A stretch of DNA of 64,000 bases from IMGVR_UViG_3300042391_000634:1-64000, one strand, 5' to 3'. Positions 16,652 through 40,278 are shown, counted from the first letter of the stretch. Notes: generated by a model not told the origin, from the letters alone. Numbers and translations: made by a program.

Positions 16652-16690
16652 CTAGAATATTCTAGAATATCACAAATAAAGTTATCCACA
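16652..16690. promoter_or_regulatory. Palindrome CTAGAATATTCTAG plus perfect DnaA box TTATCCACA in a divergent intergenic region
   Basis: Palindrome at 16652-16665; DnaA box at 16682-16690. Confidence 0.55.
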
Positions 16691-16739
16691 TTTAAAATCG
16701 TGTTTTTAAATCTCGAATATTTTTATTATATTTAATGAT

Positions 16740-17162
16740 ATGTTGTCTAAATTTAGATTTTTCAGGGGTATAGTTAGTGCAAGGATTGTCAGTATTGATG
16801 GTGCTTTAGAAAGACTAACAAGGACACCTGTTAGTCATATTCCAATACCCGATACTCTTACAACCTTAGTAGAGATACAACAATTTAGGGCAGGATGGAG
16901 ATCGTGTGAGTTTGGAAGAAACATATACGATAATCCATATAGTAATAGAGAAGCTCTAATATATTCATTACATAGAGCATGGGAATATGGATTTACTGAA
17001 TGTTTTAATAATAGAAGAGTTAATAGAGATGAAGAGGTTTATTTAGAAGGATGGGCGACAGCTCAATTAGGGTTACCATTAAATGAAAACCCACACACAT
17101 ATGGTTCAAACCAATTTAATATGTGGTATATAGGATGGAATGACTTTGTTGATAATCATTAA
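16740..17162 (+). CDS. FKF-leader protein with two RMF/CrpP-like repeats
   Basis: FRAGWRSCEFGRNIYDNPY...AWEYGF and YLEGWATAQLGLPLNENPH...MWYIGW. Confidence 0.6.
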   Translation: MLSKFRFFRGIVSARIVSIDGALERLTRTPVSHIPIPDTLTTLVEIQQFRAGWRSCEFGRNIYDNPYSNREALIYSLHRAWEYGFTECFNNRRVNRDEEVYLEGWATAQLGLPLNENPHTYGSNQFNMWYIGWNDFVDNH

Positions 17163-17166
17163 AAAT

Positions 17167-17493
17167 ATGCGAGACTTCAAATTTCTTACCAAGAACGATA
17201 CAATAAACTTTCATGGACAAATGTCCATTGAAGCGCTCGGATATTTTGATGATTACGTTAATCGTATAATTAGATATGAAATCACAACAACAACCGCAAC
17301 ATATAAGATAGCAGATTACACTTATGGTGAAGGTAACGTTGTGGCGGGAACCGTCAACGCATATCCATTAGATGCTCCCAATATCATGGTCACCTACACT
17401 ATAAGGGGTGGAGAGATTACATCACATACAATACATATAGATTATTGGAATACGATGGGGCAATTGATAAATACAATAAGACGAGAGGATTAG
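17167..17493 (+). CDS. FKF-leader protein (MRDFKFLT), paralog of 13732-14037
   Basis: Aligns by eye: FKFLTK..TIN..G......G...DY.N... Confidence 0.65.
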   Translation: MRDFKFLTKNDTINFHGQMSIEALGYFDDYVNRIIRYEITTTTATYKIADYTYGEGNVVAGTVNAYPLDAPNIMVTYTIRGGEITSHTIHIDYWNTMGQLINTIRRED

Positions 17494-17545
17494 TCGGTAG
17501 CAATACTATAATACAATTCACCACGTTTATAAGATATTTATGTAG

Positions 17546-18229
17546 ATGAAAATACAAGCATTATTCATCAGTGATGTCCACTTAGGTTCTAAAGGTTCAA
17601 ATGCAGAACAAGTCTTAGATTTACTCAAACAATATCAACCCGAATATCTATTCTTAGTTGGTGATATAATAGATGGATGGTTACTTAAACGTAGGTTCCG
17701 TTGGCCTCAATCACATACAAATGTATTAAGAAAGATAATGTCATATTCAAAGAACGGAACCAAAGTAATTTATATACCAGGAAATCACGATGAGTTCTTA
17801 AGAGAGTATGGTGAGTTTTCTTTCGGCAATATAGAAATACACAATGAATATGTATGGAATAATACTTTTATTACACACGGAGATTTATATGATGGTGTGG
17901 TTAAACTTAAATGGTTGGGTATCTTAGGGTCAATAGGTTATGATATGGCAATAACAATAGATAGAAAATTAAAGAAATTGGGAATGAAACGTTCTTTATC
18001 TAAGTTCTTAAAAGATAAGGTAAAGGAAGCTGTTAAATTCATTACACAATTTGAGGTGGAGTTAACCAGACAAGCAAAGAAACATCACTGTACATCCGTT
18101 ATATGTGGTCATATTCATCATCCTGAGGATAGAGATATTGATGGAATAAGATATTTAAATTGTGGGGATTGGATTGAGAACAATAGTTATATCATATACA
18201 ACAACAATGAATACACAGTCATTAAGTAA
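17546..18229 (+). CDS. Metallophosphoesterase, LpxH/PlcP-like (UDP-2,3-diacylglucosamine hydrolase family)
   Basis: FISDVHLG, LVGDIIDGW, YIPGNHDE, HGDLYD, VICGHIH, YLNCGDW. Confidence 0.88.
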   Translation: MKIQALFISDVHLGSKGSNAEQVLDLLKQYQPEYLFLVGDIIDGWLLKRRFRWPQSHTNVLRKIMSYSKNGTKVIYIPGNHDEFLREYGEFSFGNIEIHNEYVWNNTFITHGDLYDGVVKLKWLGILGSIGYDMAITIDRKLKKLGMKRSLSKFLKDKVKEAVKFITQFEVELTRQAKKHHCTSVICGHIHHPEDRDIDGIRYLNCGDWIENNSYIIYNNNEYTVIK

Positions 18230-21947: not shown

Positions 21948-21951
21948 AGAC

Positions 21952-22968: not shown

Positions 22969-23012
22969 ATGTATAAGTAGTTGTAACTCACAAAAATGAC
23001 CCCAATCACGAA

Positions 23013-23021
23013 TGTGGATAA
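23013..23021 (-). promoter_or_regulatory. Perfect DnaA box in a divergent intergenic region
   Basis: TGTGGATAA, the reverse complement of TTATCCACA. Confidence 0.5.
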
Positions 23022-23088
23022 CTTTATGAGGAATAATTTAGAATATACGGAAATATTTCATACATTTGTAAAAACAATATAAAATATT

Positions 23089-23373: not shown

Positions 23374-23393
23374 ATTAACCATAAAACAAATAT

Positions 23394-24780: not shown

Positions 24781-25565
24781 AGGGGACCAAAGGTCCCCGC
24801 AAACTTCCGAGATTGTCACCATTTTACTTCCGAGATTGTCCACGTTTTACTTCCCACTATGTCTCCGACATCCGTGTCGGGAACACCCCCGATTTCCCAC
24901 TCGACCTAATTTTACTACGTTGTTTTCAGGAATAAAATCCCACCTGTAGACCCCTGAAATTTACCCCCATTTTATCCCCGTTATTGACCCTGTTAGAGGG
25001 GTTTTATTTACATGTTTTTATCGTAGGTTGTAAATCGGTATAATAATCCCACTTTTAGTGATATTTATTGATTGTGTATATACCAGCGTCATTTTGGGGA
25101 GAAAGTGGGGAAAAGTGGTAAGTTGTGGGGATTGACCCTTCCGTCAATCGAGACCCATATTCTAAAAATTTCAGATATATAACTGTATTACGGGGTCCTT
25201 CGGACCCCTTCAGGTGTGTCATAGTGTCATACAATGGTATATATGTATATATAATAGGATATGTAATACGTTCATTATTAAGGGACTAATTTCTATTTAA
25301 CATAATACCTGTTATAGGTTCACAAGTTATTAACATTGTCATACACCCTGACGACCGACCGAAGGGAGGGAGGAAACTTACTAACAACTTATCCACATTC
25401 CGTAATACGTCACTTTGCCAGACAATATCACGTTGATAGAATACCCGTTCACAAAACTTGCCAAACAATATTAGAGAACTTTTGGGCCAAACACATTTGT
25501 CCGTCATACATTCGTTCCACTACGGTAATACATAAAACCTGAAGGGGACCCATAGGGTCCCCGTA
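24781..25565. repeat. Non-coding, GC-enriched hairpin/direct-repeat zone at a convergent strand switch
   Basis: GGGGACC-AAA-GGTCCCC (24782), CTTCCGAGATTGTC x2, GGGGTCC-TTCG-GACCCC (25192), GGGGACCC-ATA-GGGTCCCC (about 25544), DnaA box 25389-25397. Confidence 0.6.
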
Positions 25566-25589
25566 ATTATGATTAATGTGTAATACGTA

Positions 25590-26513
25590 TTAATAATCTA
25601 TACCGAAGTTCCCGAAACGAGTTCTTAGAAATGAACGGAATTCTGATTGTTCTTCTTCAGACAGAGGTGAATCCGAAGGAGAGTTCTTTTTACCATCAAC
25701 TATCTCCCACCCAAAATTGGCTGCAACCGTGAACTCAGGATGTAATACTTTGTCTTGTTTGTTGTATGAATTATAATCTTGATGAACAATAAACCCTGCC
25801 TTTTTAACGTCGTAATCACTCAACTCATATGTATGACCTTTCCAAGTTCCCTTTCTAAGAGCTAGAAATACTGTATGGGCTTTCTTAAGTAACTTCTTCA
25901 TATATGGTCCATAGTCATCCGAGAAGGTTGGAAGGTCTGTTGGGGATAATTTATATGTTGATAACAATAGTGACCTTGAAAATAATATATTACCAAGTGG
26001 ACGTGGAGCCGAAACCTTTGTGTTCCATATGTGGTTCTCCATCATGTCCTTTAAGTGAAATATACCCCTCAATGGAAATACATTGATACGTTGTATCTTA
26101 ATGTCATACATGTCCAACAAACTTGTTGGAAAGATAGACGGTTTATCCCTAAGGTCAGGATTAATCTTTATCAAACTATCCACAAAGTCCTCCATACATA
26201 TTGTTAACAAATTTGTTGGGATGACTGGTGTTGAATCCATGTTTGGCATAAAGTCAATATCACATGTAATCTCCCCCAGTACACCTTCTTTGAATCTTTC
26301 TGGTGTGAATGGTATCTCTTCTATACGGATTGAATTATGAATCTCACCCTCGGGAACGATTAGGGTCTTCCAAAAGATATGGTCACTTCTATATTTCTTC
26401 AGGGTCTGAACCAATTTCTCGTTGGACCTTCTTTCAGATTTGAGCTCATCGTTATCGGATGGGATATCTGAAGGTATTGTTTCGTCCTGTTCTCTTAGTT
26501 TACTTAATTTCAT
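25590..26513 (-). CDS. Leader (MKLSKLREQ) plus C-terminal KALKKG domain protein
   Basis: TATTTATA directly upstream on the minus strand; KKAHTVFLALRKG...LRTRFGNFGI. Confidence 0.65.
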   Translation of the reverse strand: MKLSKLREQDETIPSDIPSDNDELKSERRSNEKLVQTLKKYRSDHIFWKTLIVPEGEIHNSIRIEEIPFTPERFKEGVLGEITCDIDFMPNMDSTPVIPTNLLTICMEDFVDSLIKINPDLRDKPSIFPTSLLDMYDIKIQRINVFPLRGIFHLKDMMENHIWNTKVSAPRPLGNILFSRSLLLSTYKLSPTDLPTFSDDYGPYMKKLLKKAHTVFLALRKGTWKGHTYELSDYDVKKAGFIVHQDYNSYNKQDKVLHPEFTVAANFGWEIVDGKKNSPSDSPLSEEEQSEFRSFLRTRFGNFGIDY

Positions 26514-26687
26514 GTATATAAATATTGCCAAACAATATTGACAGTGGATTCCTCCTCAAGGTTTATTTTTTTGCCAAACAATATTCGAGTCATCGTCTTC
26601 TGAGTTACTTTACTATTGACTGTCTACTGTAAACAATAAACCCCCCACAATAGTGGAGGGCTTACTATTGTCGTCCTATTGGGACAA

Positions 26688-26867
26688 TTACGCCGCTAAC
26701 AATTGGTTACGGTATGTAATTGCTGTTCTCTTGTTAGAGAAGTTCTTGCTGTGTTTAGTTCCTTCTACTGATACACGAACACGGTAGCTGTTACCATCAA
26801 AGTATACATTGTTAGAAACTGGCACATAAGTTGTCTTGGTGCGACGGGTTGTTTTTGTTGTTTTCAT
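26688..26867 (-). CDS. Small basic AP2-like DNA-binding protein
   Basis: NVYFDGNSYRVRVSVEGTKHSKNFSNKRTAITYRN resembles the AP2 beta-sheet plus helix; K/T/R-rich N-terminus. Confidence 0.5.
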   Translation of the reverse strand: MKTTKTTRRTKTTYVPVSNNVYFDGNSYRVRVSVEGTKHSKNFSNKRTAITYRNQLLAA

Positions 26868-27141
26868 CTTACTGAATTTAAATTTTAACATTATTGATTA
26901 TATTAAAATATAAAAAAATAAATCCGTAAAAAAAAATAAACGGCAACTATTTTTTCTTTTTCCCAGTAATTGTTTTGCCAAACAACATCCCGAATCCACA
27001 GTGGAACCTTAACTTCTTCTTATATAATCATACCACTCCTCACCCCATCTCTCCTCCATATAGATGAAGTGACCTTTTCTTTCCTCAGTATTAAACATTA
27101 AATACCCTTTAAAGTAATCCTTATACCACCGTAGTTTTCTT

Positions 27142-28061
27142 TTAAACCTTATCATGGTATGTTACATTTACGGTTACCTCATCTAATTTAAATGTATCAT
27201 AGAACTTCTCTAAGACATCTATCTTAGCAAGACCTGTTTCTTCAGGTTCTTGGTAGTAGTGGATGTGTTTCTTAATCTTCTTAATCTCATCCGTAATCCA
27301 TAGTTTAACAAATTGGTCATTCATTTTCTAATAGTTTATATTGTTTATCACCAATAGTATCCAAGATATATGCCACCTCTACTATATCTTCCAAGTCGTA
27401 AGTGGATAGGTCATCGAACTCATCACCATATGGTGTGGTACCTGTTAAGTATTGTCCATCAGACATTGTCTTAACTATGTATGGGACCTTGACCATTGAC
27501 GCGTCGTAGGTATTCTCCTCCGTTACATACACTGTGAACGGGTTGGTAAACTCTATGGTTTCATCAAGTTTGAATAGATTCTCTATCTCATTGCAGAACT
27601 TGGTCTTCAGGTTCTTTACTTCTTCCCTTGAGTTGTAGTTCATATTATTTAATATTAAGTTTGTGGTCAATTGAATATATTTCTTTTATCTTGGACCCAT
27701 CCATATTCACACCATCCTTATTCCAAAACGGTAGGACTCTTGGATTATACTTCACCTGTTGTCCATTGTCGGGGATGAAGTCCTCAGTTCTAATATCGAT
27801 GGTGTCACATAGAACCCACGCACATACCACCTTGTGTTCCCCATTTAATATCTTCATTGCTGTGGTCCTACTATTCTTAAGGACACAATCCTTCATTACC
27901 AACTGAACATCATATGGACTGTAGTATTTGGTATATCCATTTAGGTATTGGACCTTCCACTTCATATAGTTCTCACCTCTCCCGAGGTTGAACCTAACCT
28001 TGATTTTCTTTCCCATATTAATCTTCAGTTTCTTCGTCACAACAATAAACACATTCCCCAT
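27142..28061 (-). CDS. Three hypothetical early proteins (27142-27324, 27317-27670, 27645-about 28013)
   Basis: ORF track; overlapping stops and starts. Confidence 0.6.
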
Positions 28062-28659: not shown

Positions 28660-28709
28660 AGTTTTAAGTTTAGGATGTAAAGTTAATAAAGATTTAGAAT
28701 ATCACAAAT

Positions 28710-29210
28710 TTATTTGGAATATATTTTCTTATAGTTATCCACATTTTCTTCTATCTCATATCTCATTACTGTGGATATCTTGTCATACACTCGGTCCATG
28801 AATAACTCATTGCCAGACAATATCGTCACGTCTGCTGTTCCTTCGGGGAAGTATAAATCTATTGGGTCTATAAGAACCCTTACTTCATTAATATCATTAT
28901 CCGACCTGAAGAATGGACAACGACCATACACATAAGTGTTCCTAACAGTGTAGAGTTTAACACACTCTTTCATGTTAGTTAAAGCTCTAATCTGCATAAT
29001 GATTACTTCTAAGTTAGCCAACTGTTGAATGTCCATCTTATGTTTCGAAACCTTGGTTCTATATTCTGTTACAAAGTCTGCCAAACAATATTCGCCTGGC
29101 CCGTCTGTGTTATCACTTCTTGTTATGAACTGGTCATAGGAACTCCTTTCTTTAGAGGTCCCTACAATATTTACAAATACTCCTTCGGTGGTTTTATTTA
29201 CCCTACCCAT
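28710..29210 (-). CDS. Hypothetical protein containing two repeat half-sites and a DnaA box within its coding sequence
   Basis: TGCCAGACAA near 28811, TGCCAAACAA near 29079, TTATCCACA at 28735-28743. Confidence 0.6.
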   Translation of the reverse strand: MGRVNKTTEGVFVNIVGTSKERSSYDQFITRSDNTDGPGEYCLADFVTEYRTKVSKHKMDIQQLANLEVIIMQIRALTNMKECVKLYTVRNTYVYGRCPFFRSDNDINEVRVLIDPIDLYFPEGTADVTILSGNELFMDRVYDKISTVMRYEIEENVDNYKKIYSK

Positions 29211-29423
29211 GTTTTCTTATTTAAAATGTTAAAAAATGCTTCAGTTATTTTGCCAAACCAATTCGACCTGGAGACTCTGGCTGGTCGACCAGAAAAAACC
29301 CTGGTGTTAAAATCGTTCCCTCCATAGTATGGAGTTGGTTTTCTATATGCACTTGCCACACCATATTGGCGGCACCACTCGTCTTGAGGTGGTTGTTTTT
29401 CAGGGTAAGTAGTCTTACTCACT

Positions 29424-30035
29424 TTAGGATTCGACATTGCTTTCTTTTGTTTCGTTATATAATCTTGTTAATTCTTTCTTGTCTTCGTATGATACGAACA
29501 TATATTGGTTAAGGAAGTCTTCTAATGACATCTCTTCGCCCGAGATACTATCTAAACTATAGTCCACTTCAGACCAAAACTCATCTTTAGATAAAATATA
29601 CATTCCCTCAAGGAAACCAAACTCTTGGTCAAAGACATCCAACTCACCATCTTGCCAAGTAAATGTTGTCTCACCTGTAAATCCTACCCCACCTTCAGAG
29701 TAGTAGATGTGTCCATTCACCTGATACATTTTGCACAGATTCTCCATAAAAGGAATGGGAGGACTCCAAGCTGTTTCACAACTAAAAGATATTTCATCTT
29801 TGTTTAATGTAAATGCGTGTCTATCATATGAGATATCCCATTTAGTTCCAAACCAATTTACATTAGTATCATACCATTTCTCTTTGTAATCACCTTCAGA
29901 CATATAGGATGGAATACCTATTAGAGATTTAAACACATCATCATTCTCCTTAAGATTCTTAAGAACAGCGGTGAGGGCTTTAATAGTTCCCTCATTACCG
30001 CTGATTGTAATATTGTTATTGCACCAATTTGGCAT
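29424..30035 (-). CDS. DUF1281/Api92-like ferredoxin-fold protein
   Basis: MPNWCNNNITISG...WYDTNVNWFGTKWD...F.CETAWSPP...Y.EGGVGF.G. Confidence 0.7.
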   Translation of the reverse strand: MPNWCNNNITISGNEGTIKALTAVLKNLKENDDVFKSLIGIPSYMSEGDYKEKWYDTNVNWFGTKWDISYDRHAFTLNKDEISFSCETAWSPPIPFMENLCKMYQVNGHIYYSEGGVGFTGETTFTWQDGELDVFDQEFGFLEGMYILSKDEFWSEVDYSLDSISGEEMSLEDFLNQYMFVSYEDKKELTRLYNETKESNVES

Positions 30036-30291
30036 ATTATAAGAATTTAGTTTTATCGTAGAAGTTATTGTCGAGAGCTTTCTTAATCCCACTAATTAAA
30101 TGACATCTTGGTTCGGTGTCATACACTTCAGGATATTTAACCTTAATTTTCTCTCTTGCGGTATCAAACATAGTTTCGATTACTTCGGGAGTAACTCCTT
30201 TACCTTTTTCAATAAACTTCACAATTTTATTTAATTGTGTTTGACAAGCTGTATCACCAGCTTTACTATACATTTCAAAACTCATAGTATT

Positions 30292-30888
30292 TTAGTTTTC
30301 TTGTTCTTGTTTAAAATCATTTAGGAACTCACTCTCTAATGGTAAGTTATTCAAATCATATTTCTTTATCAACTTGATTGGATAATACTCACTTTCTTTA
30401 TCGGTTAGATTAAAGAACCTGTCCTCTATGGTTAATGGATTTTTATTAAAACCCTCGTAAACCTCTAATACATTCTTATCCAAATCTACAAGATATGCCC
30501 ACTCACAGAATAAACTATCACCTGCGAAGTCGGTGCTATCAGTAATCCATATCTCATCTTCTTCACCATTCATAATCATTTCAAGAATTTTAGCTCCATT
30601 GTCTCTTGTTAGATAAGGATACTTTTCCTGATACAATTTTGACTGGTCTCCATCCATCCAACCATTCTCACATCCAATAGACTTTAGCCACTTGCTAATT
30701 TCTTTTTCTTTACTACCATTCATAAACTTGACCTTACTTAATTTCTTCTTGAAGTCGTCCAAGTTGTTTGTTGATAAAAAGTCTAATACGACAACACCAT
30801 TACCTGATGGGTATCCATCCCATTGTCCGTATTGAGCTACCTTTGTTTCTCCATTGGAGATTACCATTGTTAAGTTTCTTGTTCCCAT
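30292..30888 (-). CDS. Conserved phage hypothetical protein (GTR...QWDGYPSG.G family)
   Basis: MGTRNLTMV...YGQWDGYPSGNG...EWAYLVDLDKNVLEVY. Confidence 0.6.
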   Translation of the reverse strand: MGTRNLTMVISNGETKVAQYGQWDGYPSGNGVVVLDFLSTNNLDDFKKKLSKVKFMNGSKEKEISKWLKSIGCENGWMDGDQSKLYQEKYPYLTRDNGAKILEMIMNGEEDEIWITDSTDFAGDSLFCEWAYLVDLDKNVLEVYEGFNKNPLTIEDRFFNLTDKESEYYPIKLIKKYDLNNLPLESEFLNDFKQEQEN

Positions 30889-31187
30889 TTTTATAAGTTT
30901 AGGATACAAAGATAATCATTATATCATTACACACAAACTTTTTTTGTTAAAATTTTGCTAAAGGATTTTAAATTTCTCACAGACATGCATCTGGTTGATA
31001 TTGTTTGGCAACGTTTGCGCTGGTAAATGCTGCAAATGCGCTCAGGGGGTATTTGTTTGGCAAAATCTTGGTATTGATAATCAATGAGTTATGTTTTGCC
31101 AAACAATATCTGTCTGGTGTGCCTGGTGATTTTTCTGGTAAAACTGGTGAATTGGCTGGTGCGAAGCAACATTGGCACATGCGAAGC

Positions 31188-31216
31188 AAAAAAAATCCCC
31201 CGTATTTCTACGAGGG
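31188..31216 (-). terminator. Repeated intrinsic terminator (CCCTCGTA-GAAA-TACGGGG followed by a U tract)
   Basis: Near-identical copies at about 31191, 33884 and 37250; variants at about 26638, 35039, 36172, 38219, 38808 and 39586. Confidence 0.75.
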
Positions 31217-31640
31217 ACTGAACTAAACTTACGAACCCACCTATCTAAAACTTACTTACTTTGTAATACGTCTTTTAATAATCTGAAAGAACCTTTGATT
31301 ATAGTTGTCTCTTTAATTGCATCATCTATTGATTTAAAACTCTTGTGTAATACGAAAGTCTTACCATCATTAGAATACCAAACATCGTATGTGTTTTTAC
31401 TTTGGGATAAAATAATCTTCGTTGTCATAATAATACGGATTGATTAAGATGTAAAGGTAATACATTTTATATTACAAACAAAAAAATTTAATTATAAACA
31501 TTATTTTTCCACATTTATTTTTGCCAGACAACATCCCTCAGGGGCCTTACATCTTGTCATACAGCAAATAAAAATGGGTATCATTTCTGACACCCATTCT
31601 ATAACAAACACTACTATATTGAACACTTCTATATAATATA

Positions 31641-33577
31641 CTAAATATTTTCCACTTTATCAACTTTGTTGGAATAAACCTCCAATACATCACCCAACTG
31701 ATTCATATTGTATATTTCAGCCGTCGACTCTCCACCATTTTCACTTGGGTCTAATGTTTCTTTGACACCATCTATTTCTTCCCAACTGATTTCATCGAGG
31801 TCTCCCGATTCATACATTTCTTTGGCAATCTTCACGGCTTGGTTTAAGTCCTCAGCTTTAACTTCAAAGTCGGTTCTCATCCACGTGGTAATCTTTTGGT
31901 CTATAAAGAATTCAAATGTTTTCATTGTTACTTATTTAATTCGTTAATTAATGTGATATCAGCTTCGGACATTTCATCTACCATTACTTTACTTAACTCG
32001 TCGAGATGTTTGCCAGAGAATTTGTCATACCCACCCATTTGGTATTTGGGATAAACAATTTTTGTTTCGGTGTCGATTACAGATGCAACTGATTTTAATT
32101 CTACTATCATGTTAATTAATTTAATTTTCTTATTGACATATAATTTTCTAATTCATCCAAAGAAATACGACCATCGTTAGAACTATAATAACCTTGTAGT
32201 TCGTATCGTTTTTTCCATTTATCAAATGCCTCAAATGCTTTTTTCTTTGAGGGGTAATATGGTTTATCGAACTCAATCGTAAACCCGTCGGGGGATAATA
32301 CTTGATACTTTATCATAGTCCTGCGTTTTTAATTATACAATCTAATTTATATTCAAACTCTTGGGTCATACCCTCAATGTCATACACCCTTTTAGTTTCA
32401 TCGTCGTCGGGATGATAAAATGAGATGTCCACTTTAATTACATTTTCATTGGTTTTTTTAACCATTGTTTGTGAATATTCGGTTTCGTGTTTAGTGTCCA
32501 TATGTTGAGAACCACTAAATCTATTTTGTGAATGAACAACTACAACTTGGTGAGGACCTACCGGTTCCCAACCATCGTTAATTTTATTACCAACTACTAC
32601 TGAAAGTCCTTCGGGACTACTTGATGCTACGATTTTATATTCCATTTGATTTAATTCATCATTAAGTTAAAAAATTTGATACCTAACTCTTGTAATTCTT
32701 TACACTTTCTTTTTTTTACTACTTCATCACGAACGTACATTGACTTATCGGATGTAATACCTAAGTCCATCATAGAAAAGAAGTGTTCCCACTTACCACC
32801 AACGAATAACTCACCTGTAAATCTTTCAAGTGCATTGTAACATTCGTAGGTCATTTTTAATTTAACCCCATTAACTTTCGGTTCTTGTATTACTAACACA
32901 TCGTGGGATGTATCCCTTGTGTGTGATTTACTTTCGTAGATTACTTTATTTTTCATTTGTGATAGTTTTAAATTGATTTAGATTACAAAGATAATTTAAT
33001 ATTGTGTTAGGGAAATGTTAAAGTGTTAACGATATAAGGTAACATAATCACCAAAATACTTTTCAAAAACATTTAATAAGTTTTCGTAATCACCTTTCAT
33101 CATTTCAGATTGAATTACTTTACCATCCAAACCTAATTGTTTTGCAAACTTGGATGCCATACCAATTAATACAAATGCGTTTCCATCGGGACCAGTTAGG
33201 TCGATTTCAATTCCTGATTTTTTTTCGTTGATTGACTTTATCATAACTTAATTTTTATTTTTGTTTATAATTTTTTTCTCAAACCATTGTTTCATTGTTA
33301 ATGGTGTTAGGGCATCGGATAAATCAGTTAGAATATATTCTCCTGATTTAATTTTAGTTTCAGTTTCTTTTTTCGATTCCCCCAAAAATTGATTCCTATA
33401 CTTTCCCGTTGTCTTGGAATAATTCCAATAGGTCTCATCCAAATAAACTCTCCCGTCTTCAATCTTTACAATAATACTTTCGTAGGACTGAAAGATTCTT
33501 AAACTTTCGTTTCTAATTACAATCTGATTGGGAACTTTGTTCCCGTTCGAACTTGTTAAATTTCTAATTGTTGTCAT
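31641..33577 (-). CDS. Seven small early hypothetical ORFs (31641-31925, 31928-32110, 32116-32316, 32313-32645, 32651-32956, 33026-33244, 33248-33577)
   Basis: ORF track; TATCTTTG -7 elements upstream (CAAAGATA at about 32986 and about 33596 on the + strand). Confidence 0.6.
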
Positions 33578-33931
33578 ATTATTTGATTTAGGATACAAAG
33601 ATAATTCATTTTAAATTATACTACAAACTATTTTATGTTAAAACTTTGTTAAGATGTAATACGAATGTTTCACCTGTCGTCCGAGCTATGATATTGTTTG
33701 GCATTGTAATACGTTTGCCAAACAACTTTGGATGTCATCGGAACATGTGGGACTTCGGGAACATCAGGAACATCTTTTTGGGAACATTGGGAACATTGGG
33801 AACATGCGCACTGTGAATATCTTCTGGCAAATGCCAAACAATATTCATAGCTCACCAGGTGCTAGTATTTCCTATCGGACAATAAAAAACCCCCGTATTT
33901 CTACGAGGGTTCGGGGGACAAACAATAACCA

Positions 33932-34777
33932 TTAAACCATATGAACCAAATCTGAAAATATCTCTTGTTCTACTTGACCGATACCACCGAACATTTTTGC
34001 CTCGGTATTATCGTTCTTACTATAAGAGTGTGTTGTGTATTTTGTTACACCACTAAACAAACCCCAAAGGTTATCACCTTTACCTTGAATCTCACCATTT
34101 AAGTCAATATAGAATCTACTTAAATTGTTTTTAGTTCTTGTAGATAATTCATCACTATCTAAACTAAATTCAGGTTTGATGCCAAACAACTTTCGTGTCA
34201 CCTTCTCCTTCAACAAATCGTCAAAACGTGTTTCACTCAATTCAGTAATGAATCTGAATGTTTCTTTTTCTTCTTCCAATACAACGTCTAATCTTCTACA
34301 AATGTCTTCCACTTTTAAAGACATAGACTTTGTGTGTCGAACTTTGTTTTGAAGTCCACTCATCACTCTAAAGAATGTGTTCATACAACTGATAGTCGTA
34401 TTAGAATGACCGAATGCTAATGATGTAGAACCATCAAAAGAATTCACACCTGTTAAATAACCCTCAATTCGGTCGTTACCCAATTTAAGGTCGTTACCTT
34501 TTAATTGAACGTAAATACGTCCACCACCTTTGAACTCACCACCACGATGAATTTCTAAACCTGTTCTACCTGATACTTGATGTAATAAGTCCATCAACTC
34601 ATGGTTCTGATAAGGAACATAACCATCAGAGTGTAAACCCACAATATCTTGTGTGTCGTTTCTAACGATTGCTTTTTTGTTTGGAATACTAATACCACTA
34701 ATGGTTTGTAATTCCTCCTGACGTACCGTCCAATTAAGGTTGGTCTTGTCTAATAATGTTTTTACTTGTTCGTTCAT
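33932..34777 (-). CDS. DUF932-family phage/plasmid protein
   Basis: W.V..E.L, AIVR.DT..IVG.HS..Y...QN, NSFDGSTS..F..S.....CMN, LWGLFSGVTKY.TH. Confidence 0.8.
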   Translation of the reverse strand: MNEQVKTLLDKTNLNWTVRQEELQTISGISIPNKKAIVRNDTQDIVGLHSDGYVPYQNHELMDLLHQVSGRTGLEIHRGGEFKGGGRIYVQLKGNDLKLGNDRIEGYLTGVNSFDGSTSLAFGHSNTTISCMNTFFRVMSGLQNKVRHTKSMSLKVEDICRRLDVVLEEEKETFRFITELSETRFDDLLKEKVTRKLFGIKPEFSLDSDELSTRTKNNLSRFYIDLNGEIQGKGDNLWGLFSGVTKYTTHSYSKNDNTEAKMFGGIGQVEQEIFSDLVHMV

Positions 34778-35089
34778 ATAAATTAATTTAGAGTGTAAAG
34801 GTAGGTCTTTTATATTACCCACCAAATAATATTTGTTAACACTTTGTTAAAGAATATGTAATACGAATGGGATCCACTGTGCCATCTGAATATTGATTGG
34901 CAATTGCCAAACAAATTGTCTACGGTGCCCTGAACCAAGTCGTGTTGTCCTGTTTTTTATATAATAAAGTGGACAAGTGTAATACGTTTGCCAAACAATA
35001 TATTTGCATGCATGATGCAGGAAAGTTTGGACATAAAAAAAGGGATTGTCATACGACAACCCCCTCTTACTTTATCACTACTAACCCTC

Positions 35090-35836
35090 TTAAATGTTTC
35101 TCAAATTAATTCTACTTTCTTTGTTTCTACTAAAATTATAGATTTCTTCTATCATTTTAATATATTCATCTACACTACCACAAAAGTGAATATTAGTTGG
35201 TCTTAACTTTACCTTACGAACAAACTCACTAAAAGAAAAGTCTTTACATCTTGTTAAAGTTTTGATAATCGCTCTTACGAATGTTGAACGATTATAACCC
35301 TCAAACAAAGGTTTCAATTCCATAATGTTCATCGCCCATTCAATCGCCTTATCCATATTCTTTGTAACAAACTTACCACTCTCAAAGTTCTCTCTATCAC
35401 AACCACTTAACGAATTCGTACATAACATCATACATTCAGTTGGTCTTAATTCGGGATATTGTTTCATAAAGTTATTTAACTTAATGTAGTGTGGATTTCC
35501 CTCTACAACAAACCCGTGAATATGGTCGGTTATCGCCCAATTCTTTTGACGACTATTTAAACTTCTAATTGTTTCAAAACCTGCGGTCGTTTCTAAAATA
35601 TAAGAAATAGGAACCCCTACTTCCATAGCGGCGGTTACTCTATGTTGTCCATCAATGATTTCACCTTTCTTGTTGATAACAACATAAGAACCTCTTTCCC
35701 AACCACGAACTTTCATATTGTTTACAATATTCTTTACGTGGGATTTGTTAATAACTCTATTGTCACTTCTAAATGTGAAAATAGAATAATCTTTTGTTTG
35801 GTAAACTTCGTTTACTTTTTTTCCGTTACGTATCAT
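35090..35836 (-). CDS. ParB/Srx N-terminal-like protein
   Basis: NR.IN..HVK.I...M, VVINKKGEIIDGQHRVTAA. Confidence 0.7.
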   Translation of the reverse strand: MIRNGKKVNEVYQTKDYSIFTFRSDNRVINKSHVKNIVNNMKVRGWERGSYVVINKKGEIIDGQHRVTAAMEVGVPISYILETTAGFETIRSLNSRQKNWAITDHIHGFVVEGNPHYIKLNNFMKQYPELRPTECMMLCTNSLSGCDRENFESGKFVTKNMDKAIEWAMNIMELKPLFEGYNRSTFVRAIIKTLTRCKDFSFSEFVRKVKLRPTNIHFCGSVDEYIKMIEEIYNFSRNKESRINLRNI

Positions 35837-36225
35837 TTTTATTTTTGTTCAGATTTTATCCTGTCCCCGAGATTGATTAATAATGATAGAACAAAGATAT
35901 GTTGTATATTATTATATTCCAAGTATTATTTAGAATATTTTAGTTAAGAATATGTTAAAGTGTAATACGAAGATTTCCCCGCTGTTGCTGCAGTACGATA
36001 TTGATTGGCAAATTTTTGACCAGTGTTGATGCAGCTCAGGACCAGTGACGATATTGATTGGCAAATGCCAAACAAGTTTCAGCGCATGCGTTGTGGGACT
36101 CGACTAAGTGTAATACGTTTGCCAAACAATATTCCCTGAACTTCACAGTGCCGCTGAATTTGATAAACAAAAAAAAGGATAGTCTTTCGACTACCCTTCT
36201 TCACCTTTTCCAACCTTATGTATTT

Positions 36226-36771
36226 CTACACAAGTTCTTTTTCCAAGTGTTGTAATACGGACTTACCTTCACTTTCACATTCTTCTTCACCAAAATATCC
36301 ACCACAACTTTCAACTAATGTTTTATGTTCGTGTCCTTTATCACAAGTTTCTATTTCATATACTTCATAACAATAAACTTCACCCGTTAGATACTTATCG
36401 TAAGTTTCAATTTCACCTTTAAGGTATTCTTCAACTTTAGTTTCATCAATACCTTCTTTCTTTATCTTATGTTTAGATACAAAGATAAAACCAACCTGTC
36501 CACTATCCCAACGACAATCAAACGGACTTGTTGATATAGTTATACCCGAGTGGTCATATAGATACAAAGGTAAGATAACAACTTCACCTTCATTAGTAAT
36601 AATACCTTCTTTTAATTCGTCCCAACTATCATAATCTTCAGTTCGATAATCAGTCTTGTCACCAAGTTCATACCTTTTGTGAAAACATACCATCGTTCCC
36701 AAGTTATCCCAATCGGTTCGAGGGTTCATTGGGTTTGTGTCTTGTTCAATTTTTAATTCAAATTTTTTCAT
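36226..36771 (-). CDS. Conserved phage hypothetical protein
   Basis: NPRTDWDNLGTM.CFH.RY.LGD...LPLYLYDHSG.TI...WDSGQVGF...SCGGYFG. Confidence 0.65.
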   Translation of the reverse strand: MKKFELKIEQDTNPMNPRTDWDNLGTMVCFHKRYELGDKTDYRTEDYDSWDELKEGIITNEGEVVILPLYLYDHSGITISTSPFDCRWDSGQVGFIFVSKHKIKKEGIDETKVEEYLKGEIETYDKYLTGEVYCYEVYEIETCDKGHEHKTLVESCGGYFGEEECESEGKSVLQHLEKELV

Positions 36772-37305
36772 ATTGTTTGTTTTAGAGTATAAAGGTAAGT
36801 CTTTTATATAACATACCAAAATATTATCGTTAAGACTTTGTTAAAGAATATATCACCTGTTGGGACCGGCATCGATTGAATATTGGTTGGCAATTGCCAA
36901 ACAAATAGCAGCGCGCGCTGCTTTTCACGGGGTATTGTAATACGTTTGCCAAACAATAACCGCACAGGCCTGTGGCGCATGGTCTACAGCATTTCTTGTT
37001 CATTAATTCTTCTTGTTCACGTTCCGTGAACATAGGTAATACGTGAACACTTTTGCCAGACAATATTTCCTGAATTCGAACCGTCGGGGTGTATTCCCTC
37101 CACTATGTATTACGAAAGTCAATGGTAGTAAGGGTTTAATAATTCTTTAGAGAACTTTTAGTAAGTTTTTAGCAAATATTGTAGCAAATAGTGTGAAACT
37201 TGCCAAACAACTTGTCTACAGCGCGCACCCGGTAGATTCTCTACCAAATAAAAACCCCCCGTATTTCTACGAGGGGAACACAATATAAATCACAAACAGA
37301 ACAAA

Positions 37306-37898
37306 CTAATCTACCATATCATATTTCCAATCCATTTTTTCCATAACCTTCTCAATCTTGTCATACACTTTGGAATCTTCTACTCGGTTGAACATTTCAT
37401 CAAACACAAGTATAGAACTCGGGTCACAAAAATAGGTGTTTGTTTCTTTAACAACAACAACGTTGTATTCATCAACATTATACCAATTACCAACTCTTTG
37501 TAATTTCATATCAATTAATTTTTAGGGTTTAAGTAGATTTCCATTCTCGCGGGAACGACTTTTGCCAGATTACATTCATCACAACATTCGTCATCTTCAT
37601 TTTTAGTTTCTAACGGGTGTGGGTCATTACCATAACCTTCTACTTCTTTGTCACAAAGACAACAGATAAACTTTTCCATTTTTATTTAATTTAATACTTG
37701 AAAAATATCCTTACCAATAATCAATCCTAATGTTCTTCCGTTATCCCATTTAACATTGACAACATCAAAACCAACATTATACACAACTCCTTCACGACCA
37801 ACTAAAATTGGTTGTGGGTCATCTTCCATTGGTTCAATAAGTTTAACTCTTTTACCCATAAGTAATTGTGGGTTTACAAGGAAATCATTTACTATCAT
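37306..37898 (-). CDS. Small ORFs 37306-37509, 37515-37679 (Cys-rich CCLC...CCDEC; absent from the track) and 37686-37898 (DUF4314-like)
   Basis: Manual translation MEKFICCLCDKEVEGYGNDPHP...CCDECN; G.RV.LI..M.DD..PI..G.EG.V...VKWDNGRTLGLI.G.D. Confidence 0.55.
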
Positions 37899-38265
37899 AG
37901 TGTTTGTTTTAGAGTGTAAAGATAAGTGTAATACTTTTATATTACAAACTCATTTAGTTAAAACTATGTTAATGTGTAATACGACCAAACCCGTGGAGGA
38001 AGACCGGATAATTTATTGTTTGGCAAAATGTAAAGTAAAACCCCCACAATATGTAATACGAATTCACCCGTGGGACGAGTTTACTCAGGAGATATTGATT
38101 GGCAACCTTGTTACCTTTTTATATAAAACCATAACATAAGTCAAGTTTTTGAATCAATAAACTTGACATCTGCCAAACAATATCCGGATGGAGACGACAG
38201 GTGAGAGGTGTGGAAATAAAAAACCCCCTACTTTCGTAGAGGGTCTTGGTCTTTGGGAGGAATAA

Positions 38266-38532
38266 TTAATTCAATGGAATTTCTTTACCAATACCATACT
38301 CACAAATTTTGTGTAGTAAGGGTAAAACTCTACTACCGATAATCTCATTCAAATACTCATCTCTGTCAAATTCATCATCGGTGTCATCTTCAATGTTTTT
38401 ACCCGTTTGGTCAAAATACATATCACCAATCATTTCAAGAAATTCGTTATCACTCATTTCTTCAATCAATTGTGTTAATCGGTCAGTAATAACTCCATTA
38501 ACAATTTCTAATACTTTTTCTTTTTTGTTCAT
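38266..38532 (-). CDS. Hypothetical protein
   Basis: Start reassigned to MNKKEK, downstream of the conserved TACCTTTACACTCTAAA module. Confidence 0.6.
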   Translation of the reverse strand: MNKKEKVLEIVNGVITDRLTQLIEEMSDNEFLEMIGDMYFDQTGKNIEDDTDDEFDRDEYLNEIIGSRVLPLLHKICEYGIGKEIPLN

Positions 38533-39630
38533 TTTATTTGTTTTAGAGTGTAAAGGTAATACAATTATAGGACATACCAAAATTCATCAGTTAAAACTTT
38601 GTTAATGTAATACGTTTTCACCCGGGTGTAACTGATTGTTGTGTGGCAATTGCCAAACAAGTTCACCGATGGGATCCACGGTGTGTGTCGTAATACGAAT
38701 CTTTGCCAAACAATAGTTCGGATACTTCACGGGGAAGTGTTCCTTCATTAGAATAATTGCCACACAACATCTTAGCGGAACCCTGACTCAAGTCCGTTGT
38801 GGACATAAAAAACCCCCACCATAGAAATGATGAGGGTAAATCTAAAATGAAAACACAGACAATTACATATAAGACCATTTACGACCAAGAATATTGTTTA
38901 CCATTACACGAAACGATTTTTTATACAAACGATACATTCTATCCTCTCCCGTTGAAGTTCCAATTTTATCACTGAACTTAAAAGTCCATATAAAACGAAC
39001 AATAAAGAAAGGAGTTAAAATAAACACGATAATGATAGTTTGCCAAAGAAATTTCAATAGATACTTCATAATTTTAAAATTTTAAATGAGTTTTTAAATT
39101 ACCCTACAAGGACAATGTAGGACATAAAATAGGTTAATGAGAAACTGAACATTAGTAGTCCGTAGATTTTGATTTTCTTTTCCATTTGATTAAGTAGTTT
39201 AGGACACAAAGATAATACTTTTATCTTTATATTTTCTTATCTATTAAGAATTGGTCGTTAAAATTATGTTAATGTAATACCAAGTGGTGAGGAGTTACGA
39301 AGACACAGGAGAATATTGTGTGGCAAATCGGATATGGTTACGAATATTAACGGATATATACGGATATTGCCAATCAATATCACATTCTACAAGGAATCCA
39401 ACATTCGTTGTATGACAATTGCCAAACCATATTATTTTCTACAACCGAGATCCCTTCCATTTTTATTGTTAAACCTATGTTAAAGGTTTGCCAAACAACA
39501 ATTCGGATTTGGATTCTGTGTTCGGTGTTATGTATGACAATTGCCAAACAATAGTTCGGATTACTTCGTAAGGTTCGGGTCAAAAAAAAACCACTCCTTT
39601 CGGAGTGGTCGGTTTGTAGGGGAACAAACC

Positions 39631-40185
39631 TTAAAGAATTGTGTATTCTTGTTTAAGAATTTTAATTCTTTTAATGTGGTCTAAACTCATTACCTTATAG
39701 TTTAAGGTATTGTCTAAACCATTTTGATACTTTGAGTAGTCCGTTTTCGTATCAATAAGGTATTGAGTGAACATTACCTTTTCAATACTATTACCCTCAA
39801 ACACATACTTTGTATCAAGGTAAGAACTATCGTGGTCTTGGTAACGAAAGTAAAATTTCGTTGGGTCGGACTTTAATACTACCAAACTTTTTGATACTAA
39901 CTGATAAGGACTTTCTTTCTTATCCTCGTTTACGATAGGGGTAATTCCTTCGGTCTTATACTTTCTACCTAATTGACCTTCGTAATCAAAACCCGTTTGG
40001 ATATTTGATAACTTTTGTTCAATCAAAACTAAATCGTAATAAGGGTTAGGGTTACTTTTACCACTTACTTTGAAGTCAAGATATTTGTTCATCTTAACTT
40101 TTTTTAATGTTGTCAATCCCACATTAGGGACAAAGATATCTATACCTGATAGTATATCTTTTAGTTCTGTTTTTGTAATGTTCAT
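39631..40185 (-). CDS. Hypothetical protein, first gene of the inverted island
   Basis: Start MNITKTE; TATCTTTG -7 element upstream. Confidence 0.6.
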   Translation of the reverse strand: MNITKTELKDILSGIDIFVPNVGLTTLKKVKMNKYLDFKVSGKSNPNPYYDLVLIEQKLSNIQTGFDYEGQLGRKYKTEGITPIVNEDKKESPYQLVSKSLVVLKSDPTKFYFRYQDHDSSYLDTKYVFEGNSIEKVMFTQYLIDTKTDYSKYQNGLDNTLNYKVMSLDHIKRIKILKQEYTIL

Positions 40186-40235
40186 ATATCTTATTGTTTT
40201 GTTCCCACAAAGATATAGTATATTCCAATACAAAG

Positions 40236-40278
40236 TTAGAATATTCTAATAAAGTTATCCACATTCCGTTGTGGATAA
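40236..40278. promoter_or_regulatory. Palindrome TTAGAATATTCTAA plus an inverted pair of perfect DnaA boxes
   Basis: Palindrome 40236-40249; TTATCCACA 40255-40263 and TGTGGATAA 40270-40278, 6 bp apart. Confidence 0.65.

What the first reader, a model, noticed from the sequence alone, without database searches (positions are those of the whole stretch)
16682..40278. Six perfect DnaA boxes, five of them intergenic and concentrated at strand switches
Seen: TTATCCACA at 16682, 23013(-), 25389, 28735, 40255 and 40270(-), the last two as an inverted pair 6 bp apart; variant TTTTCCACA at 31505. A rough expectation at about 70% AT is about 0.8 copies in 64 kb (both strands). Boxes at 16682, 28735 and 40255 follow a TAGAATAT motif. 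Known: TTATCCACA is the high-affinity DnaA box. Inference: the phage uses host DnaA to regulate early promoters or prime replication, or titrates DnaA (datA-like) to stall host replication.
Basis: partly seen in the sequence, partly recalled or inferred. Interest (0 to 1): 0.68.

Follow-up and report, generated by a model that had tools for sequence, protein, structure and literature searches.

The report
DnaA boxes beside phage-encoded DnaA domain
A 335-kb lake-water phage carries a few conserved, perfect binding sites for the bacterial replication initiator DnaA at the control regions of its early-type genes. It also encodes its own copy of just the DNA-binding domain of DnaA, so it most likely reads these sites itself rather than relying only on the host protein.

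Summary
The window has 8 against about 1.4-1.8 expected. The whole 335,630-bp phage genome has only 10, so there is no genome-wide excess. The signal is local. All five intergenic copies, plus one in the last codons of a gene, lie within 16.7-40.3 kb (5 observed, 0.4-0.7 expected). Only the perfect consensus is enriched.

The sites are conserved at matching positions in related phages, including the inverted pair with its 6-bp spacer. In a clade with only 53-62% protein identity, boxes bracket the same minus-strand gene module.

The new fact is that the phage encodes a 132-aa protein consisting only of DnaA domain IV. It lies outside the window at 328,451-328,849. Its base-contact residues are conserved, and its promoter and leader type otherwise occurs only in the box-bracketed module.

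My best reading is that the boxes are operators at Bacteroidota-type early promoters, read by this phage protein and possibly also by host DnaA. A replication origin or a T5-like role remains possible. datA-like titration is not supported. The protein-box link is inferred, and it is not universal among phages carrying the protein.

The parts
16682..16690 (+). Perfect DnaA box, intergenic, between gene 16385-16639(-) and gene 16740-17162(+)
   Evidence: On the minus strand it reads TGTGGATAACTTTAT, followed by TTTG-N20-TATATTTG (16644-16651). This segment is absent from relative G006.
23013..23021 (-). Perfect DnaA box in the divergent intergenic region between 22333-22968(-) and 23089-23373(+)
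   Evidence: It is conserved 9/9 in G006 while the flanks carry indels. On the plus strand the layout is TGTGGATAA-N17-TAGAATAT-N14-TACATTTG(23061-23068)-N20-ATG.
25389..25397 (+). Perfect DnaA box near the low-coordinate end of the minus-strand module
   Evidence: G006 has two boxes here. Each lineage keeps one perfect and one decayed copy, which is site turnover. The next element downstream on the plus strand is TTTGCCAGACAA. No -7 motif was found between the box and the small conserved ORF 25055-25234(-), so its target is uncertain.
28735..28743 (+). Perfect DnaA box in the last codons of gene 28710-29210(-), 79 nt upstream of the start of gene 28018-28656(-)
   Evidence: It is conserved 9/9 in G006. 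On the minus strand the layout is TGTGGATAA-N22-TAAATTTG(28705-28712), so the box occupies the -33 position of that promoter.
40255..40278 (.). Inverted pair of perfect DnaA boxes (40255-40263 plus strand, 40270-40278 minus strand) with a 6-bp spacer, 70-93 nt upstream of the first gene of the minus module
   Evidence: The pair lies in a 40-nt block identical in G006, with the same spacer. On the minus strand the layout is box-ACGGAA-box-N16-TAACTTTG(40231-40238)-N15-TATCTTTG(40208-40215)-N22-ATG 40185. No variants fall inside the boxes in two lake populations.
43767..43775 (-). Exact TTATCCACA inside ORF 42979-43965(+), judged a chance copy
   Evidence: Most of this gene gave no match in G006.
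48914..48922 (+). Exact TTATCCACA inside ORF 48689-50101(+), judged a chance copy
31505..31513 (+). Variant TTTTCCACA, intergenic, followed after 9 nt by TTTGCCAGACAA
   Evidence: It is not conserved in G006 and the variant is not enriched. It is probably not a functional box.
25055..40185 (-). Minus-strand module of small genes with Bacteroidota-type promoters, bracketed by the boxes at 25389 and 40255/40270
   Evidence: Gene map and G006 conservation. Promoters follow TTTG-N19-20-TAYCTTTR. The module contains DUF932 (33932-34825) and DUF1281_C/Api92-like (29424-30092) genes. It is syntenic, and bracketed by boxes, in clade G008-G010. RNA contigs cover 38264-38534 and 39820-40186.
40330..40640 (.). 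Unique GC-tract element (G7TC6TCCCGTATC6...G7), followed by AT-rich direct repeats AAATTTTTCCAGAAA, next to the inverted box pair
   Evidence: It is the only cluster of G/C runs of 6 or more in the genome. It is conserved in five phages, including ones without the DnaA_C gene. Hairpin energy is no better than shuffles.
40237..40248 (.). Further copies lie at 16653-16664, 23039-23046 and 28695-28702, with TGGAATAT at 28715-28722
   Evidence: In canonical promoters of this genome the same motif abuts the -33 element (TTTGGAATATCC). It also occurs without a box, for example at 35931, where G006 has two boxes.

Best explanation
The five intergenic boxes, and the one at the 3' end of a gene, are cis-regulatory operators. 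They sit directly upstream of, or in place of, the -33 element of Bacteroidota-type host promoters (TTTG-N19-21-TAnnTTTG). These promoters drive a few genes at the borders of, and inside, an early-type module.

The most likely reader is the phage's own 132-aa protein, which consists only of DnaA domain IV (G000:C1:328451-328849, outside the window). It is transcribed from the same promoter and leader type as the module. Because it lacks the AAA+ oligomerisation domain it would bind non-cooperatively. That fits the finding that only perfect high-affinity boxes, sometimes in close pairs, are kept.

Once bound at about -35 to -60, it would switch those promoters as infection proceeds. The direction of the switch is unknown. 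Host DnaA recognises the same 9-mer and could occupy the sites before the phage protein accumulates. The same protein could also compete with host DnaA on the host chromosome.

Shown: the sites, their local excess, their conservation, the promoter geometry, and the domain identity and contact residues of the protein. Inferred: that this protein binds these sites, and that binding changes transcription.
For: Local excess: 5 intergenic boxes against 0.41-0.74 expected, and 8 of 10 genomic copies within 32 kb.

Specificity: only the perfect consensus is enriched.

Conservation in G006 (72-88% DNA identity): 40255/40270, 28735 and 23013 are kept 9/9. Site 25389 shows turnover, which indicates selection for keeping a site. 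In the G008-G010 clade (53-62% protein identity) an inverted pair and a single box bracket the syntenic module.

Geometry: boxes read TGTGGATAAC(TTTAT) 16-39 nt before a TAnnTTTG -7 motif of genes 39631, 28018, 23089 and 16385. G006 shows the same layout.

The protein: PF08299 at 4e-19, with no PF00308 domain. Equivalents of R399, R407, D433, H434, T435, T436 and H439 are conserved against 1J1V, and are invariant or nearly so across the family. The model matches the DnaA domain IV-DnaA box complex 1J1V with TM 0.92 and rmsd 1.2 A.

Co-regulation: the signature TAYCTTTRnAnYCTAAA occurs 8 times in 335 kb. Seven are in the module and one is in front of the DnaA_C gene.

Co-occurrence: relatives G007-G010 carry a 126-aa DnaA_C gene, and G008-G010 also carry an inverted box pair. 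G015 carries a DnaA_C gene and an intergenic box pair.
Against: No binding or expression data exist, and RNA contigs only show that two module genes are transcribed in lakes.

The link between protein and boxes is not universal. G018 (DnaA_C present, 97% complete) has 2 intergenic boxes against 0.62 expected, and G012's are mostly in coding sequence. Olleya phage Harreka_1 and Rhizobium phage RHph_N28_2 encode short DnaA_C proteins but have 1 and 0 boxes.

Conversely, G004 and G005 (complete, no DnaA_C gene) keep two intergenic box clusters, one beside the conserved GC-tract element. So at least that site does not need the phage protein.

The distance from box to -7 motif varies (16-39 nt), and for 16682 and 25389 the target gene is uncertain. 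Conservation of box 28735 may partly reflect coding constraint. Among all intergenic 9-mers the box ranks only 107th.
Confidence: 0.45

Rival explanations
1. Host DnaA alone reads the boxes, as a transcription factor that couples phage early promoters to the host's replication and growth state. The phage DnaA_C protein acts elsewhere, for example on host oriC or the host DnaA regulon.
For: G004 and G005 lack the DnaA_C gene yet keep intergenic box clusters. Several DnaA_C-bearing phages have no excess of their own boxes. The box equals the standard bacterial consensus (established knowledge). Host DnaA acting on phage promoters is known from lambda pR (recalled from memory, not checked here).
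Against: Host DnaA normally works cooperatively on mixtures of strong and weak boxes, but here only perfect boxes are enriched. The phage protein shares the module's promoter type and keeps every base-contact residue tested except the P423 equivalent, which is K. It therefore can hardly avoid binding these sites if it is present.
Confidence: 0.2
2. The inverted pair, together with the unique GC-tract and AT-rich repeat element at 40.2-40.6 kb, is a replication origin, or part of one, that recruits host DnaA as P1 oriR and many plasmid origins do. The other boxes are accessory or regulatory.
For: The region is a 477-bp non-coding gap between divergent genes. It holds the only cluster of G/C runs in the genome, AT-rich direct repeats and two perfect boxes. 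The element is conserved in five diverged phages, four of them with an adjacent box.
Against: There are only two boxes and no weak-box array. G002 keeps the element without a box. GC skew follows transcription and shows no origin signature. No replication genes lie nearby, and the DNA polymerase is at 146.8 kb. Hairpins are no more stable than shuffles. The domain IV-only protein cannot unwind DNA or load a helicase.
Confidence: 0.12
3. The boxes work as proposed for the T5 injection stop signal. They would anchor or pause the first-entering, repeat-rich early DNA on membrane-bound host DnaA.
For: T5-like phages keep about eight DnaA boxes, in pairs 3 bp apart, in a repeat-rich untranslated region of the first-step-transfer DNA (bioRxiv 10.1101/866236). 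Here the boxes bracket an early-type module whose spacers are full of repeats and palindromes. Relatives G006 and G015 have direct pairs with a 3-bp spacer.
Against: The T5 role itself is a hypothesis. The physical ends and entry order of this genome are unknown, because the record is linear with no terminal repeats. The boxes here sit at fixed places relative to promoters, which that model does not require.
Confidence: 0.05
4. The boxes titrate host DnaA, in the manner of datA, to stall host replication.
For: Many genome copies, each with 6-8 perfect boxes, would add binding sites (inference only).
Against: The sites are spread over 24 kb with at most two within 1 kb, and there is no genome-wide excess. 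A phage that makes its own box-binding domain has a more direct way to interfere with DnaA.
Confidence: 0.03
5. The boxes have no DnaA-related function. The 9-mer would be part of a duplicated promoter cassette (ATAAAGTTATCCACATT) recognised by something else, or would be kept by descent and coding constraint.
For: Four sites share flanks beyond the 9-mer. G006 is close enough (72-88%) that some conservation comes for free. Box 28735 is coding. The a priori P value is only 1e-3 to 1e-4, and far stronger motifs exist in the same DNA.
Against: The 9-mer recurs in different arrangements and flanks: an inverted pair with a 6-bp or 26-bp spacer, a direct pair with a 3-bp spacer, and turnover of neighbouring copies. 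These are seen in clades whose DNA no longer aligns. A co-regulated DnaA-box-binding domain encoded in the same genome would also be a remarkable coincidence.
Confidence: 0.1

Closest known systems
DnaA boxes in the injection-stop (iss) region of T5-like phages (bioRxiv 10.1101/866236, read)
   Same: Both have perfect and near-perfect DnaA boxes conserved in non-coding, repeat- and palindrome-rich DNA associated with the earliest genes. Both have boxes in close pairs, and in neither case do they lie at a known origin.
   Different: T5 has about eight boxes in a fixed inverted-repeat scaffold within one untranslated region and encodes no DnaA-like protein. Here five or six single or paired boxes sit at separate promoters over 24 kb, and the phage encodes a DnaA domain IV protein. 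The T5 function is itself unproven.
Bacterial DnaA acting as a transcription factor at DnaA boxes (dnaA autoregulation, lambda pR). Recalled knowledge, not checked here.
   Same: In both, a 9-bp box next to or overlapping promoter elements modulates RNA polymerase.
   Different: The likely reader here is a stand-alone domain IV with no AAA+ domain or domain I, so there is no nucleotide switch or cooperative filament. The promoters are of the Bacteroidota -33/-7 type.
E. coli DnaA domain IV bound to a DnaA box (PDB 1J1V), and the Pfam family Bac_DnaA_C (PF08299)
   Same: The phage protein has the same fold (TM 0.92, rmsd 1.2 A). It keeps the GGRDHTT..H signature and the R399 equivalent.
   Different: It is 132 aa in total. 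It has a disordered N-terminus carrying an invariant PYxFPG motif of unknown role. The P423 equivalent is K.
Short DnaA_C proteins annotated in cultured phages: Olleya phage Harreka_1 gp24, Rhizobium phage RHph_N28_2, Pelagibacter phages HTVC010P and HTVC035P
   Same: These are small phage proteins containing only, or little more than, the DnaA helix-turn-helix domain, and they lie among early or replication genes.
   Different: They share only about 30-33% identity with this protein. No function has been reported for them in the papers I could search. Harreka_1 and RHph_N28_2 have no excess of boxes in their own genomes.
Origins that use host DnaA boxes, such as P1 oriR and plasmid origins (recalled knowledge)
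   Same: Both have perfect boxes flanking a unique non-coding element with AT-rich repeats.
   Different: No initiator gene, iterons of the Rep type, or replication genes lie next to the boxes here. Most of the boxes are elsewhere, at promoters.

Membership tests
High-affinity DnaA box (TTATCCACA, R1/R4 type) | Exact 9-bp consensus sequence | tested here: met
   There are eight exact copies in the window and ten in the genome.
High-affinity DnaA box (TTATCCACA, R1/R4 type) | Occupied by DnaA domain IV in vitro or in vivo | not testable with these tools
   This needs EMSA, footprinting or ChIP. The only support here is indirect: conservation and a cognate domain encoded by the phage.
Bac_DnaA_C / DnaA domain IV (the phage 132-aa protein) | Profile match above Pfam's gathering score | tested here: met
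   PF08299 scores 68.7 bits against a cut-off of 31.5, E 4e-19. The six-frame search gave 69.7 bits.
Bac_DnaA_C / DnaA domain IV (the phage 132-aa protein) | Base-contacting residues of the 1J1V complex (R399, P423, D433, H434, T435, H439) | tested here: met
   Five of six are conserved, as the R70 equivalent and GGRDHTTIIH. The P423 equivalent is K. R70, D96, H97, T98, T99 and H102 are invariant or nearly so in the family.
Bac_DnaA_C / DnaA domain IV (the phage 132-aa protein) | Domain IV fold | tested here: met
   The AlphaFold2 model has pLDDT 76. Its top PDB hits are 1J1V_A (TM 0.92, rmsd 1.2 A) and 3PVP.
DnaA replication initiator (full protein) | AAA+ ATPase domain III (PF00308) and N-terminal domain I | tested here: not met
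   No PF00308 match was found anywhere in the 335-kb genome, and the protein is only 132 aa. It is therefore not an initiator.
oriC-like or DnaA-dependent origin | Cluster of several strong and weak boxes next to an AT-rich unwinding element | tested here: inconclusive
   Two perfect boxes and AT-rich repeats lie at 40.2-40.6 kb, but weak boxes are not enriched. There is no skew signal and no nearby replication genes.
datA-like DnaA titration locus | Four or more boxes packed within about 1 kb | tested here: not met
   There are at most two boxes within 1 kb, and the sites are spread over 24 kb.
T5-type iss DnaA-box array | Pairs of boxes 3 bp apart inside inverted repeats of a large untranslated region of the first-injected DNA | tested here: inconclusive
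   The window has one inverted pair with a 6-bp spacer. Relatives G006 and G015 have direct pairs with a 3-bp spacer. The scaffold of inverted repeats was not found, and the entry end of the genome is unknown.
Bacteroidota sigma-A promoter (-33 TTTG / -7 TAnnTTTG) | TTTG, 19-21 nt, TAnnTTTG at a short fixed distance upstream of start codons | tested here: met
   Eighteen TTTG-N19-20-TAYCTTTR sites were found. Seven lie in front of module genes and one in front of the DnaA_C gene. TAnnTTTG peaks 10-30 nt before starts, unlike the reversed control. Transcription starts were not mapped.

The most novel reading that the evidence does not exclude
A widespread group of freshwater jumbo phages has captured only the DNA-binding domain of the host replication initiator and made it an early protein with two jobs. 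As a non-cooperative transcription factor it would read perfect DnaA boxes that bracket and punctuate the phage's early, anti-defence-like module. As a dominant-negative competitor it would occupy host DnaA boxes at oriC and in the DnaA regulon, shutting down host initiation. The invariant N-terminal PYxFPG peptide would be its handle on RNA polymerase or another partner.
Probability: 0.3. Interest if true: 0.72.

Novelty: new variant of a known kind. Interest (0 to 1): 0.58.

Why it matters
DnaA boxes on phage DNA have been noted before in T5, lambda and P1, always with host DnaA as the assumed reader. Here a large uncultured phage group from many lakes combines conserved perfect boxes at early-type promoters with a phage-encoded, co-regulated DnaA domain IV.

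If the protein reads the boxes, it would show how a phage turns a piece of the host's replication initiator into its own transcription factor. It would probably also be a competitor of the host initiator. The idea is directly testable with one small protein and 30-bp DNA fragments.

The work also yields practical annotation for this unannotated clade. It points to a Bacteroidota-type early promoter, a candidate early regulon, a candidate late promoter motif, and a unique conserved non-coding element that may be an origin.

Tried and rejected
- **Near-identity search** of 8 kb against 50,697 phage records found nothing, so there is no close cultured relative.
- **Rfam and tRNA scans** of the window found nothing.
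- **GC skew** follows transcription only and gives no origin signal.
- **The sigma-70 promoter scan** was uninformative: 75 hits against 84 expected. I first read TAGAATAT as a -10 element with the box just downstream of the start site. I dropped that reading after finding the Bacteroidota -33/-7 pattern and seeing that the motif abuts -33 in canonical promoters.
- **My codon-usage gene finder** missed real genes in the higher-GC module, for example 28710-29210. I corrected it by checking conservation in G006. My earlier claim that all six boxes are intergenic, and the sizes I gave for the 'long spacers', were revised accordingly.
- **Whole-record box counts against the reversed-word control** are about 2-4 fold higher in records both with and without the DnaA_C gene. 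They therefore do not discriminate.
- **Pfam and PHROG scans** of about 50 neighbouring proteins returned almost only unknowns. There was no replication initiator, helicase or loader near the boxes.
- **The bacterial-genome scan** with the protein family found only one distant hit, in an Alistipes MAG at 28% identity. It gave no host assignment.
- **Hairpin folding** of the GC-tract element and of the conserved 25335-25375 element was no better than shuffles.
- **Not searched or not used:** records behind L011/L088 (334 kb), L019/L093 (316 kb), L094 and L099 are not held, so their box counts are unknown. Complex prediction and the large representative search were not used, because no claim here rests on them.

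Full report
**Source.** The window is the first 64 kb of a 335,630-bp virus record. The record is 31% GC, linear with no terminal repeats, and estimated complete by CheckV. It comes from lake-water metagenomes and near-identical DNA is present in many lake samples. It has a contractile-tail sheath gene, a family-B-like DNA polymerase and collagen-like tail fibres. No close cultured relative was found.

**Checking the observation.** All six TTATCCACA sites are at the stated places, and the last two form an inverted pair with a 6-bp spacer. Two further exact copies, 43767(-) and 48914(+), lie inside long ORFs.
- The window holds 8 copies. Shuffles expect 1.4, and Markov orders 1-5 expect 1.3-1.8, giving P about 1e-4 to 6e-4.
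- The enrichment is modest. The box ranks about 100th among the window's 9-mers, and single-mismatch variants are not enriched.
- The whole genome has only 10 copies against 5-7 expected.
- The real signal is therefore positional. Eight of the ten lie within 32 kb (scan P 1.5e-5).
- Five lie in the 24.7 kb of intergenic DNA, where 0.41-0.74 are expected (P 7e-5 to 1e-3).
- The sixth, 28735, lies in the last codons of a conserved gene, 28710-29210(-).
- In intergenic DNA only the perfect consensus is over-represented. The four remaining genic copies in the genome match chance.

**Conservation.** Record G006 is a 66.9-kb fragment, syntenic with window 10-46 kb at 72-88% DNA identity.
- It has 11 exact boxes, all in its 42-65 kb part.
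- The inverted pair with the same 6-bp spacer lies in a 40-nt identical block. Boxes 28735 and 23013 are kept 9/9 while their flanks carry indels.
- At 25389, G006 has two neighbouring boxes. Each lineage retains one perfect and one decayed copy.
- G006 also has a direct pair with a 3-bp spacer at a promoter where the window (35931) has lost both boxes.
- In clade G008-G010 (53-62% protein identity, DNA not alignable) the minus-strand module is syntenic. An inverted pair lies about 0.9 kb upstream of its first conserved gene, and a single box lies about 2.4 kb beyond its last. This is the same bracketing as 40255/40270 and 25389 in the window.
- The nearest relative for the 40623 gene, L019, also has a box beside the same non-coding element.

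**The phage-encoded DnaA domain.** A six-frame search of the genome with PF08299 (Bac_DnaA_C) found one strong match at 328,568-328,768, and no AAA+ domain (PF00308) anywhere.
- The ORF is 132 aa and matches Pfam at E 4e-19.
- Against E. coli DnaA domain IV (1J1V), the equivalents of R399, R407, D433, H434, T435, T436 and H439 are conserved (GGRDHTTIIH). The P423 equivalent is K.
- The AlphaFold2 model superposes on the 1J1V DnaA-box complex with TM 0.92 and rmsd 1.2 A.
- The family is large in metagenomes, with 96 homologues, nearly all of 132 aa. The contact residues are invariant or nearly so.
- It carries an invariant N-terminal PYxFPG motif in a disordered segment.
- It occurs in many jumbo-phage contigs and essentially not in bacterial genomes.
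- Short DnaA_C proteins are annotated in a few cultured phages. I found no functional study of them.

**Promoter context.** The minus-strand genes from about 25 to 40 kb have canonical Bacteroidota-type promoters, TTTG-N19-20-TAYCTTT(G/A), followed by a shared leader.
- TAnnTTTG peaks 10-30 nt before start codons, unlike its reversed control.
- The extended signature TAYCTTTRnAnYCTAAA occurs exactly 8 times in 335 kb. Seven are in this module and one is in front of the DnaA_C gene. The protein therefore appears to belong to the same, presumably host-polymerase-dependent early, regulon.
- The module includes DUF932 and DUF1281_C/Api92-like genes.
- Two of its genes are covered by metatranscriptome contigs, while the spacers and the box region are not. 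Contigs cannot show transcript ends.
- Read in the direction of the nearest downstream gene, the boxes appear as TGTGGATAAC(TTTAT), 16-39 nt before a -7 motif. At 28018, and at one of the two -7 motifs of 39631, the box occupies the place of the -33 element. At 16385 and 23089 it lies just upstream of that element. G006 shows the same arrangement.
It is a recurring, partly palindromic promoter-region motif (TAGAATATTCTA, TTGGAATAT). In canonical promoters it abuts -33 (TTTGGAATATCC), and it also occurs without boxes.
- For 16682 and 25389 the regulated gene is uncertain.

**Interpretation.** The best-supported reading is that these boxes are operators at a handful of early-type promoters. The phage's own domain IV protein is at least one of their readers. 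A domain IV without the AAA+ module cannot bind cooperatively, which would explain why only perfect boxes and tight pairs are kept (inference). Whether binding activates or represses cannot be told from sequence.

**Limits.** The protein-box link is not universal.
- G018 (DnaA_C present, 97% complete) has no significant intergenic excess, and G012's boxes are mostly coding.
- Two cultured phages with DnaA_C proteins have 1 and 0 boxes.
- G004 and G005 (complete, no DnaA_C gene) keep two intergenic clusters of TTATCCACA plus TTTTCCACA. One lies beside a GC-tract element homologous to window 40330-40480.
- Host DnaA is therefore a credible reader, at least at that element.

**The GC-tract element and the other rivals.** The element is the only cluster of G/C runs in the genome and is conserved in five phages. 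It lies between divergent genes with AT-rich direct repeats, so an origin role is possible. Nothing further supports that role. The T5 injection-stop region is the closest published parallel for conserved DnaA boxes in repeat-rich early DNA. datA-like titration does not fit the dispersed layout.

**Verdict.** I class the finding as a new variant of a known kind, of moderate to good interest, and it can be tested directly with one small protein.

Noticed in passing
window 22342-40325 (31 of 33 genomic copies): TTTGCCA(A/G)ACAA(TAT) is by far the most over-represented word in the window, with 27-28 copies of the core 9-mers against about 0.4-0.7 expected at Markov order 1-3. It lies mostly in the spacers of the minus-strand module. 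It often forms the palindrome TTGnTTGGCAATTGCCAAnCAA, followed about 50 nt later by GTAATACGTTTGCCAAACAATAT, with CGTATTACA as a companion motif. It is also present in G006 but scarce in more distant relatives. It looks like an operator array for another regulator.
   Followed up: partly
window 40330-40640: A unique GC-tract element (GGGGGGGTCCCCCCTCCCGTATCCCCCC...GGGGGGG) is followed by direct repeats AAATTTTTCCAGAAA. It is the only cluster of G/C runs of 6 or more in a 31% GC genome. The core CCCGTATCCCCCCTT is invariant in five phages with only about 61% protein identity in the neighbouring gene. It may be an origin, a packaging site or an RNA. Folding energy is no better than shuffles.
   Followed up: partly
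window 30898-38558 minus strand, and G000:C1:328403-328442: The Bacteroidota-type promoter plus leader signature TAYCTTTRnAnYCTAAA occurs exactly 8 times in 335 kb. Seven copies are in the module and one is before the DnaA_C gene. This points to a Bacteroidota host (a lake-water phage of 31% GC) and defines a candidate early regulon.
   Followed up: partly
whole genome, for example window 40608-40616 before the ATG at 40623: (A)GTATTTATA lies 10-30 nt upstream of 52 start codons genome-wide. It is a second promoter class, possibly late, or a translation-initiation signal.
   Followed up: partly
window 33932-34825(-) and 29424-30092(-): DUF932 and DUF1281_C (Api92-like) proteins are encoded here. 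From memory, not checked here, these families are typical of plasmid and ICE leading regions and of prophage anti-restriction clusters. That would suggest the module is an early anti-defence island.
   Followed up: no
G000:C1:328451-328849 (L009:1384-1782), residues 1-16: The DnaA_C family has an invariant N-terminal motif, (S)PYxFPG(L), in a segment predicted to be disordered. This looks like a short docking peptide for an unknown partner.
   Followed up: no
window 25335-25375: A 29-nt stretch, ACACCCTGACGACCGACCGAAGGGAGGGA, just before box 25389 is identical in G006, although the surrounding DNA is about 72% identical. No stable fold was found and its function is unknown.
   Followed up: partly
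window 23673-24773(+) and 44010-45380(+): Endonuclease VII/HNH-type and HNH homing-endonuclease-like genes flank the box-rich region. G006 matches only 61 aa of the first (38% identity), which suggests mobile insertions.
   Followed up: no
window 38600-39630: A spacer of about 1.1 kb with no conserved ORF has no metatranscriptome coverage. Population variants in lake metagenomes show deletions and rearrangement joints here (skips of 103-1584 bases). It appears to be a hypervariable repeat-rich spacer.
   Followed up: no
G015 locus L154 (G015:C1:163666-166494): In a distant DnaA_C-bearing phage, one intergenic box lies directly next to what looks like the 3' end of a tRNA gene (GGTTCGAATCC...).
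   Followed up: no
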